DNA of 64,000 bases from Ophelia neglecta (Eukaryota), in the NCBI GenBank assembly GCA_965285935.1, contig OZ260663.1:55056001-55120000 (forward strand). Direction: 5' to 3'. Of this stretch, positions 1 to 8,600 are shown piece by piece. Under the pieces are notes generated by a model, which saw only the letters and a program-made list of their open reading frames with translations, made no database searches and was not told the DNA's origin. Within the stretch, counting starts at the first letter, position 1; each line of letters begins with the position of its first letter. The translations under genes and the position numbers were made by a program.

Positions 1-1681
1 AGATGTACAAACACATTTTGTCTCGAGAGACAAAGACGTGGACTTCGCACCAACCTATACGCATTGTAAACTAACAAAGCTTGTCTCAAAATAAGCACAT
101 GAACCTTTTTAAAAGCAGAAGTCAAACCATATATATTATAATATTCACAGAAATAACACTGTTACTGTATTGAGACAGGCCTCTACCAGGGTTAGTAGAA
201 TCCAGTATACACTGCTGTTTTTGATAAATTCAAACCTGATTAATAAACGTTATTGAGATCTACTGATATTACTCACTGATATTTGTTTGAGACAAAAATT
301 AGATTCATACTAAAAATGATAATATTAGGTGTATATCTTAAATTGAAATTAATAAATATATCAGATGGACATAAACATGATGAGCAACCATATCAATGAG
401 ACAGACCATACAAAATTTTGATGCTACGGTGCAGTAAAAGTTTGGCCACTGTCTTATGTTATGTGTAAGTCACAGGGAAATGGTAAAGAATTTTGTGCTC
501 TATAAGGGATACACCTTTATTACTCTCGTAACTGCCACAGCAATACATGTTAAGTGAAAATTTGTACAATGTAAGTCTTACTCAATCATTTGAGCTAGGC
601 AACAAGAAAATATATATATATACTCCCATTTACATTTTAATAAAAGACTTAAAGCAATAAATATCTAGAACAAATATAATGTTTGGCTCTTTTAAAATTT
701 AAGTCTGAAATGCACATTACTTATTAGGCACAAGTTCAAATGAGACAGGCATATACGAGTACATACACACAGGTCATAACGCAATAAGTGGTTATATCAT
801 TTCAACTCAAATCTATGACCACACTTCAGCATATAAACATAGTACAATTATAGTACCAGGTTGGTGTCATATTGCTTCAGCAACTGTTCCTACACAACAT
901 GTGAATTACAATTGTAGGATTCCACTCAAACTGGAGAGTATTCAAACTAAGTACTCCTGTCGCTTGGTAAACTAGCTCCGTCTAACTCTACATAATAACC
1001 AAGTATCCATTGGGCATTTTTTCTTTGCACAAAATGCCTTCATCTTATAGAATATATTTAAAGTTAACTTATTAACAACAGTATGAAAAAGTAGTCTAGT
1101 TAACAGGATATCATTTCATTCAGTATGAAATAACTATATTGTTAATTTATGGCAGCACAGCTGGATTTATTTCGATGGCGGACAACAATGCTAGAGTGAC
1201 TTTAGTGAAATCAGAACACTGGTTCTGCTCCCTAGTCAAACGCCGGCGAAGGATTCCTTCCTTTTCCGGCCGAGTTCATAAACACAAGGTAATAGTCAAC
1301 TACCCTGTCTAGTGCACTTTAATGTGTATCAGTGCACACTTGATAGGTACCTTTCTCTCAATCCATGCGGGTAATGGTGCGATTCACCAAGGTGATGTTC
1401 TCAAATCCCGAGTGAGATCAACTAGGGTATCAAAACACTGAGACAGTCCTCAAATCCCTTACTATCCATTCAGTTGGTTGCTATTGGATAATAAAGTTCT
1501 TCTCCTTGGCTAACAAGATAAACAAACAATAACTGGCATGTCTTGAACAGTGACCACCATCAGTAGTAACTAATATGAGCAAGGGCAACTTTAAGAGACT
1601 TCACTTTTTTAGTCTGTATTTTCTTTCCAGGCAAGGCATGTGAATCATTCATCCTCTGAACAAGCGTAGTGTGATGTAGGT
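1..1681 (-). other. Probable 3' UTR with candidate AATAAA signals at 1166-1171 and 516-521
   Basis: AT-rich, no ORFs, downstream of both stop codons. TTTATT on the + strand at those positions. True end unknown. Confidence 0.5.
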
Positions 1682-2505
1682 CTAGCTCTCTGTGACAGAC
1701 TCATGGATGTTGGTGAGCACAGGCGGGGTGTGGGTGGCATCCTCTCCGTGGGTGTCTGGCTGTTGACTGGGGGGTTCTGGCGGTGAGACGGGATCTGTGA
1801 TGGGCATGACACTCACACTAGGATCCACCCCCAGTGCTGGAGCCTCCTCAGACCTGGTAGGCACTATCTCAATCACAGGTTCATGAGTGGGGACAAATGC
1901 TGGCGGATGCTCAGAGGCCGAAACAGGGGTAGATATATGAGGAGGACGCTCCAGATCTACTGGCTGAGCCATTGGACCTGGAACTTCAGGAGCCAGCTGG
2001 TCTGAAATCAGCACAGCTGACTGTATGGCTGTAGAGGGGGGGATTTCTGGGCATATAGTGGGCACCGCCGCATAGGACATGGCTACCGAGCTGGGTAGAG
2101 TAGCTACGGAAAGGGTTGTTGTTGTATACATGCCATCAGATTGGGGAATGTAGTACGCCGCCGGATATTCACTGGGGGCTGTCCCGTAAGTGCCCTGGGG
2201 CACCTGAACCATGTATTGCTGGTCTGAGGAGTACGCCATGCCTCCAGGGGCAGAGCCGCTGTGATAGGAGGCCACACCACCATCCAGCATCCCTGCCGTC
2301 ATACACGAGTCTCCCATTGGGGCCAGATTGTTGCTGCCTGTTACTCCAGACATATCCATGGAGGCCATGTGTCCTAAGCTATCCAATGAGGAGCCATCGC
2401 TCCCCGGGGACATCATGGCATAGCTTGTCCCAACATAGCCTGCAAGGCCACGGCTGCGGCCAGTGCTCGAACGTCTGCCACGATTCGATGATGAGTTCAC
2501 ATTAC
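1682..2505 (-). CDS. TCF12: Alternative long terminal coding region (~274-aa Ser/Pro/Met/Tyr-rich C-terminal extension)
   Basis: Part of the 311-codon stop-free frame 1682..2617, which is visibly more GC-rich than its flanks. Acceptor ctttgtattttggtgcag|GT at 2506/2505 is phase 1 and matches the phase-1 donor at 4201. Confidence 0.65.
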
Positions 2506-2549
2506 CTGCACCAAAATACAAAGGGCTGTTGTTATAGGCACTGTTAGCA

Positions 2550-2600
2550 TCATAGATGATGCCCCATGTCCATCGGGTATGGTGCCCTATTATCTGGTCC
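2550..2600 (-). CDS. TCF12: Short terminal coding exon [16 protein letters not shown]
   Basis: Acceptor gcctctttccag| at 2601, phase 0 from the donor at 4196. The MGHHL* ending resembles the vertebrate E-protein ending (..PMGHM*). Confidence 0.75.
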   Translation of the reverse strand, partial: GPDNRAPYPMDMGHHL

Positions 2601-5600
2601 CTGGAAAGAGGCAGCAAGAAATCTGCTCAGTTTTGGATTCAGATTAGATTTTAATTGTGTTAATAGCTTCATCTACTGATTACAATGACAAACATGCTGC
2701 TGTGGCTAAATTAGCTAGGCTGGGCTGGGTGTGTAGAGAACTGGACTGGAGGAGACATGGGGCAGTGACTTTTAGTCCTGATTCTATGGAACTCTGTTGA
2801 TTAGGCATACAGCAGAATTGACATAAAACCAGGTCTCAACATTTTAGAAATTTCAAATTTAAATATGGAAAAGAACTCACAGTTTTCCTGAAATAGTCTT
2901 AATTTAAAATCAACTAGATAAGATACCCCCTGAATACTGGGCTAGATGTGTATTGTCTCCACAAACTGAGATTAGTTGGGCATCCACAGGGTTATACTGT
3001 CAAAAAGTAAATTTAGATGGTTAGTAACATGGTATGACTATGTGATCATAGATACCAGCCACCAACCAAGTTCCCCCAAACCATAATCCTTATAATATAA
3101 AGACCACCAATCCAAAGGCCCACCAAAAGACCCTGTAAGAAATCTGCCCACCTCAGAAACCCAAGCCAAGCAATCTATTGCACCAGCCACCAGCTAATAA
3201 ATAGATTAGCATGAAAACATTTTGGTATGAGGTTATGAAGGAAATATTTTGATAATTATTTCTGAGGATGGGCAATGAATAGCATAAATATCTCTGAAAC
3301 ATCACTACATGACATATACTTCCTTCATAACTTCAAAATAATAACTAACATAAATAATGCTGGGTAATAGGATGCCTTAATACATTAAAATATGCAGACT
3401 TTTTCCAATGTTTTACAACCCATACCAAGTTGCAGACCACCCACAATTTCTCTGTAAAAATAAATAAATTCCTTCAAAAAGGAGGAGGTATCCCACCATA
3501 AAATCCACTTCCACCAAACCGTTGTTTCAAATGAGTTAATTAACATATGGCTAACAGCCTTCCATACTTAATTTAAATGAACACTAGTGATCTTAAAGTC
3601 ATCATGACTATTTTCCATCAGACCACACAAAACCTAATGCATCCTGTCACCCATTCATAACAAGCAATGTTTAATTTCATATAAATTTATGTAGAAATAA
3701 TCAACCATTATGTATCAAAATGGTTGATAACTCCTACACACATTGCACTAACATCTCATGCTTTTTTTGGTATTTATATATACAAACATAGTTACAGTTA
3801 AGAAGGTCACCAATGTGTCACTTTTCAGGTCAGCATGGGAGTGGCACATTTCTACACAACATAATAGTTTAAAAAAATATAAAAACAATTCTGCCTTCTG
3901 AACAGGTGTGCCTCTTGATGGCCAACCGATGGTAACACATTGATGACCAATGTTCACTATCATCAGAAAAACCAGGCTCCTAAGTATACACCTTGGCAAA
4001 AAGGAGGTTAACCTAAGATTTATAGCATTTTTATTTAGTGTGCAAATAAAATATGCAGATTGTAAATGGCATCTCCGGTGTTCTTAATGTTTGAAGTTTA
4101 ATTTTTTCTTCTTTTGCTAAGGTGCAGACTCGTGAGGAACTAGGGTATATTGTCTTACATAAAGATAGAGTTAAGTGTGTTTGCCTGATACATACCTTAC
4201 CGGCCATGGCAGCCTGCTGAGCAATGTCCAAAGGAGGTCCCAAGGACCTCCCTGGTAGCTCCTCTGTTTTCTCCTCCTCCCTACGCTTTAAGCATGCTGC
4301 CTTAGGGTTTAAGTTGCGCTCTGGAAATAAGCACACATTAAAATATGAGTTTCAAATTGATAAACTTGACAGATTACTAACTATCAAAACTGCTATTCAC
4401 ACCAAATAGAAACCAGATACACCTGAATATCTTATACTTTATTATTTTATTTATATATATCATACAATAACAATATTTAAAGAAATGTTCCATAGCATGC
4501 TTGAATACAGGCAGACATATAAATACAAAATGCTGTTAGGACATTTTTTTCTTCAATAAACCATAACCAGGGGTTAGTGGCCACTCTAGCTTAATTCTCA
4601 ATTAAAAGCGTTTACACACATAAAATATACACACTTGGGTTAACATAATATAATAATAAATGCTGTTAGTCCACAACAGAACATTACCTCTGACTTGCTG
4701 CTCTAAACTGGTTATTACTGACACTGCATGTTGCAAGATAGTCAGCTTTGTTTGGGGTTTGTCCGTGCTAAGGTGAAGTGAGCACATGCGACCCAATTCT
4801 TTGAAGGCCCCGTTGATATCACGCACACGTATCCTGTGGGGGAAGAGAGAAGACGGGAGTTTGGAGGTTGTTCATGCATGCACTCACATTCATACTAGCA
4901 GAGGTGGATTTAGAAACCATTGGGATAGAGGGGCGAGGGCATTATTGACAAAGTAGGGTTCCCAGGGTATTCCCATACGGACTTGGGTAGGATATGGGGC
5001 ATCTCTCGTAGGATTTTTTTTGGTCAGTGTCAGGGCTTGGGCCCAAGTCTTGCCGAGCAACACGGCTAGTACAATTCCTTCTGCAGCCTCTCAGGACTGT
5101 TCTGGCTTTTTCAAACATGCAAGCAAACCATGCAGAAGCATTCTGTGTCAAGGCCACTTGTAGATCAGGCAATCGGTTGCTTGAGAGTGGTTTTTACCTC
5201 GGACTTGTTGCTCAAGGGTAGTGATGACATTGACTGCCTGCTGCAGAATCATCAGCTTGGTCATCGGCTGACCATTGCTAGTATGGATAGAGATCATGTG
5301 ACCTAACTCTTTGAATGCTTCGTTTATGTCCCGTACTCGTAATCTGTTGGGCAATCCAGTGGCATTGAGAATTAGAATGGACAATACCTTAACAGCATAT
5401 ACAAGAAAACAAGCACAGTAAAAATGTCCAATCAACTGTTTATCATACACTATCAGCAACATAAGAAATTAATTTTCACTTATATTTACTTGTTATTTTT
5501 CCAATTTATATTTTCAGAAAATTGTATGTTCCTTGTTATTCTGTGTACTCCTGTGTCAACTTAGCCAACAACACTTTTGCTCTTTTCTCCGTAAACTTTC

Positions 5601-8600
5601 ATCAACACCAGCTGCCTTTAGCCTTACCTTTCTCTAGCATTATTAGCCTGCCGCCGCAATCGTTCACGCTCTGCTTTAGATTCTGGGCTCTCATTGGGAT
5701 CATCTTCCTCCTCGTTTCTGTAAAAGCCAAACAATCTATCACATCCGTAATAATGGGTGATGAAAATAATTGGCACAATGGCACCCTACCATAATCACAA
5801 GAATTAAAATGGGTTTTCCCAAAATGGACATTAATATAACTTAATGCATCCAGAAACCACATAAGGTGTTGAGAATGCTAAAAACAGGCAAATAATGGGC
5901 AACAGGGAGCTCTTAGAGTGGCTTGTACTAGCACATTCCGCATGTCAATGAGAAGGTTAAATAAAATATTCCCCTCATCACTTGAAGAAGTCCTGAACAG
6001 ATATTCTGATGTGAAATCAACTTACTCTGAATCAAGACTTGGTCCAAGCGAGTCCCTACAATCACAAGGGGAAACAAAAATAACATGAAATGGTAGAAAT
6101 AAAACAAGGTTTTGCCATACACTTTAGAAACCACTACTAGGGTGGAGAGACTGTGAAGACAGGGTGGTATATATGATGATAATGCTACCCTGCTTACACT
6201 GGCCCTACTATGACTTTAGCCATACAGAACATTGACATATTACCAAATGATTACTATTTTGTGCAGCTCATGTGCAAACAAAAGTTAATTAAATAATGCA
6301 AAGGATCCAAAATTTGGATGTTTTAATGGGTGACCTAGTCCATGTGGTCTTTTGGTTGCCTAAGGCTAGTATGTCTGAGAATAATATTAAAGCAAAGACA
6401 GCCATGAAAGCCGAGGAAATATATTAATACTGAGAAATTGTTCATTGGAGGCCTGGGGAAAAAAAGCATAATTTTTACTTAGTACTCTGACAAATAATGG
6501 AGCATTATACAACTTAACCAGTTAGCAAGCGAATCCAAAAAAACATCGAGAAATCAATATGGTTGGCATGCTAGTTTGAAGTGTTAAATACAAGGATATA
6601 TGCCTATATATAAATATATATATCAGGAGAACCCTATCCGTTCAAAGGAACAGATTAGGTTTTTACTGGCTATTATCTCTGAATCACTGAAGAAACCAAG
6701 TTGAAATTGGCTTGTATAAATTTTGAACATTCTGCGACAATAAATAAGCAAATAAAAAACAAAAGAACACCTTATACCAGCAGACTGGTTGGAATTGGCA
6801 TTTATACCAATTAATATCAAAACTATCAACTATATAGTCATTTCCTATCCATATAAAGTTTCTAGTATCTAAATAGAATTTTTATTTTCATTAGTACAAG
6901 TCGACTCAGTGTGCCAGTAGGTTTTTACTTACTGCCTTGATCTTTTGGATGGCGGAGCACCACTCTGTGGTGTCAAAGGAGAAGTCATATCTGACAGTGA
7001 TCCCGAAGTGCGACCAGATTCCTTCATTTTTTGGTCTTTCTTACTACTTTCATCGGCCGTTTTTTCAACTTTCAATTTTTCTATTTTTATGTGGCCATCC
7101 GTAGTTTGTTCTGTTGGTTGTTCATTTCTTAAGTCTATAAATGTGGGTACAAAATATAGATTAGGTAATGGAAATTGAAAGCAAATCAGTGCATGATGAT
7201 AATTAATATACTAGATACATGGTCAGTTTCTGGAATTCTTTATTGCAAGAAAGATATGTTCTTAATACATAAATATGAAGATATTTTATACACAAGGGAT
7301 GCTCCTTCTACACAGTTCTTGTAGATTGTTTATTAATCTATTTTAATGTAAATATATTCTTACTATTGACAGATGATTGATCCGGGCCTGTGTGTCTATT
7401 ATGTGATCGCTCATCTGATAATGATGTGTGGTTGCCACCCTGAAATAATTGAGGAAAATTAATATGTAAATATGATATGTATTATGAGAGCTGCCTGTGA
7501 CTGGGTTGAGTATGAGTGATGGTAGATTATGAGGGAGTGACAGCCTGTTATATTTGACCCTGGGTATATATCTGGCCCTGGGTATATGATGGTTGATTAT
7601 GAGGGAGAGATAGGCTGTTGACCCTGGGTATATGCTGTCCCATGTTACCCTTTTCATCGCCCCGCCTTGTCTGATGAGGCAGGCTGGTTTCCCTGACCCT
7701 CCTCCACCCGTGCCAGCCTCTCCCCACTCCACATGTGTGACTTGTTAGAGGACGCTCCTACTATTAACCACCCTCCCTCTTCACCGCAGTCAAGTTCATC
7801 CCTGGTCACTGAAAACAGGAATAAATGACTCCAACTTTGACCCACACCCTCAAATTTATCCACATGATATTGACTTCCACTGCGTCAGGCACTGCACAGT
7901 GACTTCTCCAATTTGACAGAAGGAGGCAAGAAAATTGCACCTTCAATCTCTCTACACCATTTGCCATCTGGTTGCATTATACAGCATAGGAGGGGACAGT
8001 TTTCAACACTTTGACAGCTACAGAAAGTGAAATCAGAGGCATGTTTTGTTGGAACTGGATACCTGCCATACACCATGATATTAGGTGATATGTGTCAGGG
8101 AGAGAGATGGCACCTGGGTGCGGGGTTGCTCCAGAGCGGTCCTAAGGAGGGCCTCACTACAGGTATGGGGAGCTAGCCATGATACAGCACCATGCCAGCC
8201 CCAGGCCCACTCACAAGCACCTGTTGTACTTCAGCTACTGCTCAGCTACAAGCTGGATACAGTTTCTATCACATCCTCCACATCTACACACCCCACTCCC
8301 ATCAGTATGGTGAATGTCAATTAACCCATCAACACAATGGGACTGGCTCAGACCACCTACAATCATGGATCTCTCTAAAAACCAAGCCAATCAACTATCT
8401 ACACTCATCATTCCATCATACCTACAGCAGCCAATCCTAACTCACACTTCCTCTTGTCATCTCTTTGTTAAAACCATACCTCGCTGCCACATAATGCCAC
8501 ACAGCACTACTTACAACTAGATTTTCTAAATGTTACAGAGAAGGCGTAAGCAAAGGGGGGATTAAAAGAAACTGATCTCCTACCAAATCATAATGGTATC

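What the first reader, a model, noticed from the sequence alone, without database searches (positions are those of the whole stretch)
1682..4201. Dual-frame last exon: splice-site choice switches between short tails and a ~274-aa C-terminal extension
Seen: the C-domain exon has two donors 5 nt apart (4201 phase 1, 4196 phase 0) and the last exon has two acceptors (2600, 2505). 4196>2600 gives the family-like [16 protein letters not shown]. 4201>2505 enters a long stop-free frame (GNVNSSSNRGRRSS...YYIPQSDGMY...EPPSQQPD...VTES*), giving a ~948-aa protein. The cross combinations give GTR* and VM*. Known: vertebrate E-proteins end a few dozen residues after the HLH. Inference: what looks like 3' UTR encodes an optional Ser/Met/Tyr-rich then Pro/acidic (PEST-like) module, possibly an extra activation or degradation domain.
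Basis: partly seen in the sequence, partly recalled or inferred. Interest (0 to 1): 0.82.

Follow-up and report, generated by a model that had tools for sequence, protein, structure and literature searches.

The report
Hidden coding tail of E-protein gene
What looks like the 3' untranslated region of this invertebrate E-protein (class I bHLH) gene holds a real, evolutionarily conserved coding tail of about 273 residues.

Summary
The sequence features are all present as described: donors at 4201 and 4196, acceptors at 2600 and 2505, the four reading outcomes, and a stop-free 273-codon frame at 1685-2503 (minus strand).

The long frame is truly coding.
- Orthologous open frames of 273-325 codons lie directly after the E-protein short tail in six other sequences. 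One is the annelid Paralvinella palmiformis.
- On alignments made from nucleotides only, omega is 0.13-0.35 in this frame. It is above 1, with many stops, in the other two frames.
- All 10 indels between the two closest relatives are multiples of 3.
- Constraint starts exactly at the conserved acceptor. The spacer upstream varies freely in length modulo 3 and holds no usable ATG.

Two spliced transcript contigs from relatives prove the short isoform (...K|GPD...MGHHL*) and carry the tail as 3'UTR. No transcript with the long junction was seen, and no RNA run exists for this genome.

The twin donor is missing in four relatives that keep the tail. All four genomic loci have a micro-exon of 3n+1 bases between the C-domain exon and the last exon. 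A public automated Paralvinella model (KAK2157195.1, 1017 aa) uses that micro-exon.

Verdict: a real optional C-terminal module.

The parts
5628..5717 (-). Basic-region exon of the E-protein gene (...[21 protein letters not shown]), ending in phase 2
   Evidence: Direct reading. tblastn match to the relatives' E-protein CDS.
5198..5343 (-). HLH exon A (146 nt, ends in phase 1); first of two duplicated, probably mutually exclusive HLH exons
   Evidence: PF00010 match, E 3.7e-9. Same pair of exons in L001 and L006.
4688..4833 (-). HLH exon B (146 nt, ends in phase 1); this is the type used in the relatives' transcripts
   Evidence: PF00010 match, E 1.2e-8. 78% identical to the HLH of the L005 transcript.
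4196..4320 (-). C-domain exon ([30 protein letters not shown]...AAMAGK). The phase-0 donor follows 4196. A second possible donor (phase 1) follows 4201.
   Evidence: The phase-0 AAG|GT donor is conserved in all relatives. The relatives' transcripts join ...PK directly to GPD.... The G|GTAAG donor is present only here and in L001.
2971..3068 (-). The only conserved block inside the last intron: TACTAAC branch point, pyrimidine tract, ACAG acceptor and the first 27 nt of a candidate micro-exon
   Evidence: 83% identical to L001 across an otherwise unalignable intron. The acceptor aligns with the micro-exon acceptor of L004.
2927..2996 (-). Candidate frame-shifting micro-exon: 70 nt if the donor is GGG|GTATCT, or 34 nt (2996..2963) if the donor is TTT|GTGGAG. 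Both lengths are 3n+1 and both are open in phase 0.
   Evidence: Orthologous micro-exons are 40 nt in L001 and 31 nt in L004 and L006, with strong AG|GTAGGA donors. The Paralvinella model KAK2157195.1 includes it. The window lacks that donor, so the 3' end here is uncertain.
2550..2600 (-). Start of the terminal exon at acceptor A1 (2600): short family-like tail [16 protein letters not shown] plus TGA
   Evidence: Only two substitutions against L001, both synonymous in this frame. The same junction and tail occur in transcripts L005 and L007.
2506..2549 (-). Spacer between the short-tail stop and acceptor A2. It is 3'UTR in the short isoform and intron in the long one. It carries the pyrimidine tract and CAG of A2.
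   Evidence: 4-nt indel against L001. The A1-to-A2 distance is 91-118 nt and covers all residues modulo 3 in the seven species.
1682..2505 (-). Long alternative C-terminal tail, entered in phase 1 at acceptor A2 (2505): Gly junction codon, 273 codons, then TAG. Motifs: RGRR basic cluster, invariant MMSPG-S-(D/E)-GSSLDSLG, a Tyr/Met-rich middle, and a Pro/acidic end.
   Evidence: Open orthologues in 6 other sequences. Omega 0.13-0.35 in this frame only. All 10 indels between L005 and L006 are 3n. Constraint already acts upstream of the first Met.
1..1681 (-). 3'UTR common to both isoforms, with several conserved blocks (for example 1591-1356). It runs past the window edge.
   Evidence: blastn blocks shared with L001 and L003. 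L003 continues 3.15 kb beyond the stop and ends just after AATAAA.

Best explanation
The gene is the class I bHLH (E-protein) gene of an invertebrate, probably an annelid. Its terminal exon serves two products. The main mRNA joins the C-domain exon (phase-0 donor after 4196) to acceptor 2600 and ends 16 codons later with the family-like ...MGHHL. In that mRNA, 1685-2505 is 3'UTR. A second, probably minor, mRNA splices into the inner acceptor at 2505 in phase 1. It replaces the short end with a roughly 273-residue disordered tail that is conserved across distant relatives. Acceptor 2505 needs a phase-1 partner. The route conserved across relatives is inclusion of a 3n+1 micro-exon (acceptor at 2997|2996) after the phase-0 donor. 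In this species and in L001, the extra donor after 4201 could do the same job directly. Shown here: the tail is under protein-level selection, coding starts at the acceptor, and the short-isoform junction exists in relatives. Inferred: the long junction itself, which route is used in this species, and the function. I take the tail to be an isoform-specific regulatory or activation region built from short linear motifs: a basic RGRR-Ser cluster, an invariant Ser-Pro/acidic-Ser motif, an aromatic-rich stretch and a Pro/acidic end.
For: A relative, P0001, is 50% identical and lies 2 kb downstream of HLH exons on the same strand. Five more orthologous sequences were found, all directly after the E-protein short tail. 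All seven frames are open for 273-325 codons. On nucleotide-only alignments, omega in frame 0 is 0.13 (L005/L006) to 0.35, while the other frames give omega above 1 with 14-27 stops. All 10 of 10 indels between L005 and L006 are 3n. The 25-31 codons between A2 and the first Met show pS 0.69 against pN 0.06 (L004/L005), and L006 has an in-frame 3-nt insertion right after A2. There is no in-frame ATG between the nearest upstream stop and A2 in 6 of 7 species. Spacer length is free modulo 3. Micro-exons are 40, 31 and 31 nt, each with a TACTAAC branch point. This is the only conserved intron block in the window. The Paralvinella palmiformis model KAK2157195.1 joins the bHLH, the C domain, the micro-exon and the tail. 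That annotation used Maker2 with Augustus plus Trinity transcripts (PMC10414810).
Against: No transcript shows a junction into 2505 or its equivalents. The two spliced contigs from relatives (L005, L007) and the probable metatranscriptome contig L003 all run unspliced through A2. For this genome only DNA-like runs were found. The window lacks the strong AG|GTAGGA micro-exon donor of the relatives, and the available donors (GTATCT, GTGGAG) are weak. The Paralvinella model is imperfect: it lacks the basic region and retains 36 intronic codons. It may be largely ab initio. No other protein of 560-1780 residues with this tail was found.
Confidence: 0.75

Rival explanations
1. One reading: the long tail is reached only by using the upstream donor after 4201 (phase 1), spliced directly to 2505. 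The choice between donors 5 nt apart, paired with the two acceptors, is then the switch.
For: Both donors have good consensus (CCG|GTAAGG and AAG|GTATGT) and both are present in L001. The window has lost the strong micro-exon donor seen in relatives. The junction codon would be Gly, as in all other routes.
Against: The twin donor is absent in L004, L005, L006 and L007, which keep the tail under selection. GGT-AAG is simply Gly-Lys, read as coding in the short isoform, so its presence in two related species needs no special explanation. The micro-exon acceptor block is conserved in the window itself.
Confidence: 0.25
2. The long tail is reached by skipping the C-domain exon. Both HLH exons end in phase 1 with a G, so HLH>2505 is in frame and would give a bHLH protein that lacks the C domain but carries the tail.
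For: Phase-1 ends of the HLH exons occur in the window, L001, L004 and L006. The C-domain exon with donor 4201 is 120 nt, a multiple of 3.
Against: This does not explain the conserved 3n+1 micro-exon with its branch point. The C domain is the most conserved part of the family after the HLH. No evidence for such a junction was found.
Confidence: 0.08
3. The tail is translated on its own from the short-isoform mRNA (a downstream ORF starting at the invariant Met-Met), or belongs to a separate nested gene with its own promoter in the last intron.
For: The Met-Met is invariant in all seven species. The micro-exon contains an in-frame ATG in L001 and L004.
Against: There is strong purifying selection, with only in-frame indels, in the 25-31 codons upstream of the Met-Met, where 6 of 7 species have no ATG back to the nearest stop. 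The micro-exon ATG is GTG in the window and ATA in L006. The micro-exon has a conserved acceptor and branch point, so it is an internal exon. No other conserved block exists in the intron.
Confidence: 0.06
4. The open frame is non-coding 3'UTR that stays open by chance or through composition.
For: It lies in the 3'UTR of the only isoform seen in transcripts. The predicted product is disordered and has no Pfam domain.
Against: Seven open orthologues, omega 0.13-0.35 in this frame only, and 10 of 10 indels a multiple of 3. The chance of such an open frame is about 1e-4 or less in one species alone.
Confidence: 0.02

Closest known systems
Vertebrate E-proteins TCF3 (E12/E47), TCF4 and TCF12, and their splice isoforms
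   Same: Class I bHLH with an AD2-type LDDAIHVLR motif, the C domain [18 protein letters not shown], and a short end of the ...MGH(M/HL) type. Isoforms arise by alternative splicing, and this gene even has duplicated HLH exons like E12/E47 (PMC6795145 for TCF3).
   Different: From my own knowledge, the known vertebrate isoforms differ in N-terminal, activation-domain or HLH exons and end a few dozen residues after the HLH. None adds a tail of about 270-325 residues after the C domain. The tail has no detectable relative outside this group in the protein collections searched.
GenBank KAK2157195.1 / UniRef100_A0AAD9N569, a 1017-aa 'hypothetical protein / BHLH domain-containing protein' of Paralvinella palmiformis
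   Same: It contains the orthologous tail joined to the bHLH and C domain through the 31-nt micro-exon and the inner acceptor. L006 is the same or a nearly identical locus.
   Different: It is an automated, uncharacterised model. It lacks the basic-region exon and reads 36 codons of intron after the C-domain exon, using another phase-0 donor. It shares about 30% identity with the window's tail.
Drosophila Daughterless
   Same: A single invertebrate E-protein that continues for roughly 100 residues beyond the HLH and C domain (my own knowledge, not tested here).
   Different: That extension is constitutive. No similarity to this tail was found: the searches returned no arthropod or other named protein.
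Frame-switching cassette exons and alternative 3' splice sites inside terminal exons (a general splicing mechanism)
   Same: An exon of 3n+1 bases changes the phase, so a different acceptor and frame of the last exon is read. What is 3'UTR for one isoform is CDS for the other.
   Different: Here the mechanism is inferred only from conservation and from an automated gene model. No junction reads are available.

Membership tests
Class I bHLH / E-protein (TCF3/4/12, Daughterless) | bHLH domain (Pfam PF00010) | tested here: met
   Both window HLH exons score 35-37 bits against a cutoff of 20.7. The basic region [14 protein letters not shown] lies in the preceding exon.
Class I bHLH / E-protein (TCF3/4/12, Daughterless) | Conserved C domain directly after helix 2 ([18 protein letters not shown]) | tested here: met
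   Exon 4320-4196.
Class I bHLH / E-protein (TCF3/4/12, Daughterless) | AD2 / loop-helix motif (LDDAIHVLR) | tested here: met
   Window 11464-11300, with a second copy at 12971-12912.
Class I bHLH / E-protein (TCF3/4/12, Daughterless) | N-terminal AD1 domain | not tested
   The 5' exons were not mapped and may lie outside the window.
Alternative 3' splice site giving a second C-terminus | Conserved acceptor signal, with coding constraint starting exactly at it | tested here: met
   A pyrimidine tract plus YAG|GTAATGT (GTCATAATGT in L006, which has an in-frame 3-nt insertion) is present in 7 of 7 sequences. There is no constraint on frame upstream, and only 3n indels downstream.
Alternative 3' splice site giving a second C-terminus | Transcripts that carry the junction | not testable with these tools
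   Only DNA-like runs were found for this genome. The relatives' contigs show only the short isoform.
   Present in the window and L001. Absent in L004, L005, L006 and L007.
Frame-switching micro-exon | An exon of 3n+1 bases with splice signals, between the phase-0 donor and the phase-1 acceptor, in every genomic locus | tested here: inconclusive
   Clear in L001 (40 nt), L004 (31 nt) and L006 (31 nt), and used in KAK2157195.1. In the window the acceptor and first 27 nt are conserved, but the donor is weak and ambiguous (34 or 70 nt).
PEST / degron or activation domain | A demonstrated effect on stability or transcription | not testable with these tools
   Only composition (Ser 40, Pro 35, net charge -19, no Lys) and predicted disorder (mean pLDDT 46) are available.

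The most novel reading that the evidence does not exclude
Annelid-type E-protein genes carry an ancient, lineage-specific, disordered C-terminal module of about 275-325 residues, hidden in the 3'UTR of the canonical mRNA. A tiny 3n+1 'frame-switch' exon, or in some lineages a second donor that replaces it, turns it on. One bHLH hub factor would then exist in two forms with different regulatory tails. The module has no relative elsewhere and may have arisen from 3'UTR sequence.
Probability: 0.45. Interest if true: 0.6.

Novelty: new variant of a known kind. Interest (0 to 1): 0.5.

Why it matters
E-proteins are the obligate dimer partners of most tissue-specific bHLH factors, so an isoform with a large extra tail would change how a central developmental hub is regulated in a whole animal group. 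The case also shows that apparent 3'UTR can hide a strongly selected coding region, reachable only through a micro-exon that annotation pipelines and transcript assemblies usually miss. Finally, it offers a possible example of two interchangeable ways to reach the same splice phase: a micro-exon and a shifted donor.

Tried and rejected
- **RNA evidence.** When laid on window 1-5900, their contigs cover the introns without any joints, so they are DNA. Nothing can be said about expression in this species.
- **Domain and feature searches.** Pfam on the tail found nothing. The ESM Atlas feature search gave no usable hit.
- **Metagenome scan.** A scan of metagenome contigs with the tail profile produced 72 pattern matches, none confirmed. 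L003's own record was evidently not in that collection, so spliced transcripts were unlikely to be found there.
- **Search for long proteins with the tail.** Searching for proteins of 560-1780 aa that carry the tail, using P0007 residues 682-1017, found nothing. Long proteins can sit hidden as members behind short cluster representatives, as P0007 itself did. Absence is therefore weak evidence.
- **Origin by internal duplication.** Rejected: the tail compared with the rest of the E-protein gives no similarity.
- **Read-through or frameshift from the short tail.** Rejected, because the spacer length varies modulo 3 and L001 has two stops between the tails.
- **Earlier notes of this scan.** Nothing was recorded near this place.
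- **Literature.** Searches found nothing on such a tail.
- **Joined models.** Exons were searched separately by reference, and the total length of about 948 aa is unverified.
Full report
**1. What is in the sequence**

On the minus strand the window carries an E-protein (class I bHLH) gene.
- A basic-region exon lies at 5717-5628.
- Two duplicated 146-nt HLH exons lie at 5343-5198 and 4833-4688. Each scores above the Pfam HLH cutoff.
- The C-domain exon starts at 4320 ([30 protein letters not shown]...).

The C-domain exon ends ...GCC ATG GCC G|GTAAG|GTATGT. GT donors therefore follow 4201 (phase 1) and 4196 (phase 0).

The terminal exon has two acceptors.
- The acceptor at 2600 (ccag|GGACCAGAT) gives [16 protein letters not shown] plus TGA.
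- The second acceptor at 2505 (ttttggtgcag|GTAATGTG) opens a frame of 273 sense codons, ending with TAG at 1684-1682.

The frame has 57% GC against 39% for the window. It is very unlikely to be open by chance: about 8e-5 with its own composition and about 1e-8 with the window's. It is single copy in the 762-Mb genome.

**2. The long frame is a real coding sequence**

A word-based protein search found one relative, P0001 (50% identity). It lies on a 73-kb eukaryotic contig of an ENA assembly (L001), 2 kb downstream of HLH exons on the same strand. L001 repeats the whole architecture.
- It has two HLH exons.
- Its C-domain exon has the same GCTG|GTAAG|GT end.
- It has a nearly identical short-tail segment, the same inner acceptor, a 278-codon open frame and a conserved 3'UTR.

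The exhaustive profile search and a second word search added five more sequences.
- L003: a JGI contig of 4158 nt.
- L004: an ENA genomic contig.
- L005 and L007: Logan contigs.
- L006: an ENA genomic contig.

All seven frames are open for 273-325 codons.

I aligned the DNA without reference to the protein.
- The two closest sequences, L005 and L006 (72% identity), differ by 10 indels, all multiples of 3.
- Omega in the long frame is 0.13 for that pair and 0.24-0.35 for more distant pairs.
- The other two frames give omega above 1 and hold 14-27 stop codons.

It rules out a non-coding or chance frame.

**3. Coding begins exactly at the inner acceptor**

The distance between the two acceptors varies as follows (direct reading):

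| Sequence | Distance (nt) |
|---|---|
| window | 95 |
| L001 | 91 |
| L003 | 98 |
| L004 | 117 |
| L005 | 116 |
| L006 | 118 |
| L007 | 106 |

Every residue modulo 3 occurs, even among close relatives. In L001 the two tails happen to share a genomic frame and are separated by TGA and TAA. The 'dual-frame' geometry is therefore incidental. Read-through or frameshifting cannot be the conserved entry.

Downstream of the acceptor, constraint is immediate.
- The 25-31 codons before the first Met read N-V-(N/S)...RRGRR.SS.GRR...Y.
- They show 18 synonymous against 4 non-synonymous differences between L004 and L005.
- L006 has an in-frame 3-nt insertion directly after the acceptor.

In 6 of 7 species there is no in-frame ATG between the nearest upstream stop and the acceptor. 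Independent initiation is therefore very unlikely. The pyrimidine tract and YAG|GTAATGT (GTCATAATGT in L006, because of that insertion) are conserved in all seven.

**4. What transcripts show**

L005 and L007 are spliced mRNA contigs.
- Their E-protein reading frames (424 and 165 residues) run without introns through the basic region, HLH and C domain.
- They continue into ...GGPK|GPD...MGHHL (MGHPL in L007) followed by the stop.

Both contigs then continue unspliced through the inner acceptor and the long frame. The tail is therefore 3'UTR of the dominant isoform.

L003 starts two bases before the outer acceptor and ends just after AATAAA. It looks like a complete terminal exon from a metatranscriptome.

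No contig shows a junction into the inner acceptor. For the window's own genome, the only runs found are DNA, with contigs spanning the introns and no joints. The long isoform is inferred from evolution and has not been observed. It is probably minor in the samples assembled so far.

**5. How phase 1 is reached**

The twin donor is not the conserved answer. L004, L005, L006 and L007 end the C-domain exon with ...GGA CCN AAG|GT (Gly-Pro-Lys, phase 0). They have no GT 5 nt upstream. In the window and L001, the extra donor is simply the Gly codon GGT followed by AAG.

The only conserved block in the 1.6-kb last intron of the window is 3068-2971, at 83% identity to L001. It contains:
- a perfect TACTAAC branch point,
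- a pyrimidine tract,
- ACAG,
- 27 coding-like bases (YN..DAQLI, with two synonymous changes).

The relatives carry micro-exons at the matching position.
- In L001 this exon is 40 nt and ends AAG|GTAGGA.
- In L004 and L006 an exon at the same place is 31 nt and ends GAG|GTAGGA. Four of the five substitutions between those two fall on third codon positions.

All these lengths are 3n+1. That is exactly what converts the phase-0 donor into the phase-1 partner of the inner acceptor, and the junction codon is always Gly.

The public Paralvinella palmiformis protein KAK2157195.1 (1017 aa, P0007) surfaced as a hidden member of P0005's cluster. It joins the C domain, this micro-exon (ISEQELSWSG) and the tail. 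That annotation combined Augustus with Trinity transcripts in Maker2 (PMC10414810). The model has flaws, so it gives independent but weak support.

In the window, the strong micro-exon donor is missing (GGAG|ACAATA). Two 3n+1 alternatives remain:
- a 70-nt exon ending GGG|GTATCT, open in phase 0, inside a 10-nt stretch conserved with L001;
- a 34-nt exon ending TTT|GTGGAG.

In this species the donor after 4201 may therefore really be used, possibly as a replacement for a weakening micro-exon. Skipping the C-domain exon is also in frame, since the HLH exons end in phase 1, but it explains less.

**6. What the tail is**

It has no Pfam domain and no similarity to the rest of the protein. Apart from the six orthologues, no relative was found among the protein collections searched. 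AlphaFold2 with the seven-sequence alignment predicts no structure: mean pLDDT is 46 and there is no secondary structure.

Conserved elements, in order:
- a basic RRGRR-Ser-Ser-x-GRR cluster;
- the 15-mer MMSPGSDGSSLDSLG, which varies at only one position (Glu for Asp in L007);
- a GMMY..D.QY(L/M)V motif;
- an EY..YY(M/I) or EV.TYFL motif;
- a P(I/V)SP motif near a Pro/acidic end.

In the window the tail has 40 Ser, 35 Pro, 14 Met, 11 Tyr, no Lys and a net charge of -19.

My reading is that it is an isoform-specific regulatory or activation region made of short linear motifs. The Ser-Pro/acidic-Ser motif and the RxRxxS-like cluster would be candidate phosphorylation-dependent sites. This is inference only.

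**7. Identity of the organism and comparison with what is known**

The tail's relatives include Paralvinella palmiformis, a terebellid annelid. The E-protein exons are 60-88% identical to those of the alvinellid-like transcript. I therefore take the window to come from an annelid or a close lophotrochozoan relative. This is an inference.

Known vertebrate E-protein isoforms vary in N-terminal or HLH exons (PMC6795145, PMC3137626). From my own knowledge, they end shortly after the C domain. I found no description of a long alternative C-terminal tail. The module exists in a database only as part of an uncharacterised automated model. I rate it a new variant of a known kind: alternative splicing giving alternative C-termini in an E-protein.

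**8. Limits**

All searches were exon by exon, by reference.

Noticed in passing
window 5343-5198 and 4833-4688 (minus strand); also L001 7152-7403 / 7685-7894 and L006 about 448-597 / 1352-1497: Two tandem 146-nt HLH exons with identical phases, like the mutually exclusive E12/E47 exons of vertebrate TCF3. The relatives' transcripts (L005, L007) use the second type. Exon A is the more divergent (...[20 protein letters not shown]...). Whether this duplication is shared with vertebrates or independent is open.
   Followed up: partly
window 12971-12912 and 11464-11300 (minus strand): Two copies of the AD2 / loop-helix exon motif ([20 protein letters not shown] and [21 protein letters not shown]). 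They may be a second pair of alternative exons.
   Followed up: no
window 8880-8536 (minus strand): An open frame rich in Tyr, Asn and Gln (prion-like composition). A comparable Tyr/Asn-rich segment is present in the Paralvinella model P0007 but absent from the L005 transcript, so it is probably an optional cassette exon.
   Followed up: no
window 1591-430 (minus strand), L001 10826-12269, L003 1054-2387: Several 3'UTR blocks of 75-88% identity persist between species whose synonymous sites are saturated, for example ...ACTGATGGTGGT..TGTTCAAGACATGCCA... These are likely regulatory elements of the long 3'UTR.
   Followed up: partly
window 2932-2923 (minus strand), L001 9547-9556: A 10-nt CAGGGGGTAT stretch is conserved in otherwise diverged sequence, about 30 nt downstream of the micro-exon core. 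It could be the micro-exon donor in the window, or a G-run intronic splicing enhancer. hnRNP H/F G-runs control TCF3 exon choice in vertebrates (PMC6120717).
   Followed up: no
protein cluster of P0005: A 1017-aa annotated protein sat hidden as a member behind a 293-aa cluster representative. 'No long hit' results from the representative-based searches are therefore weaker than they look.
   Followed up: yes
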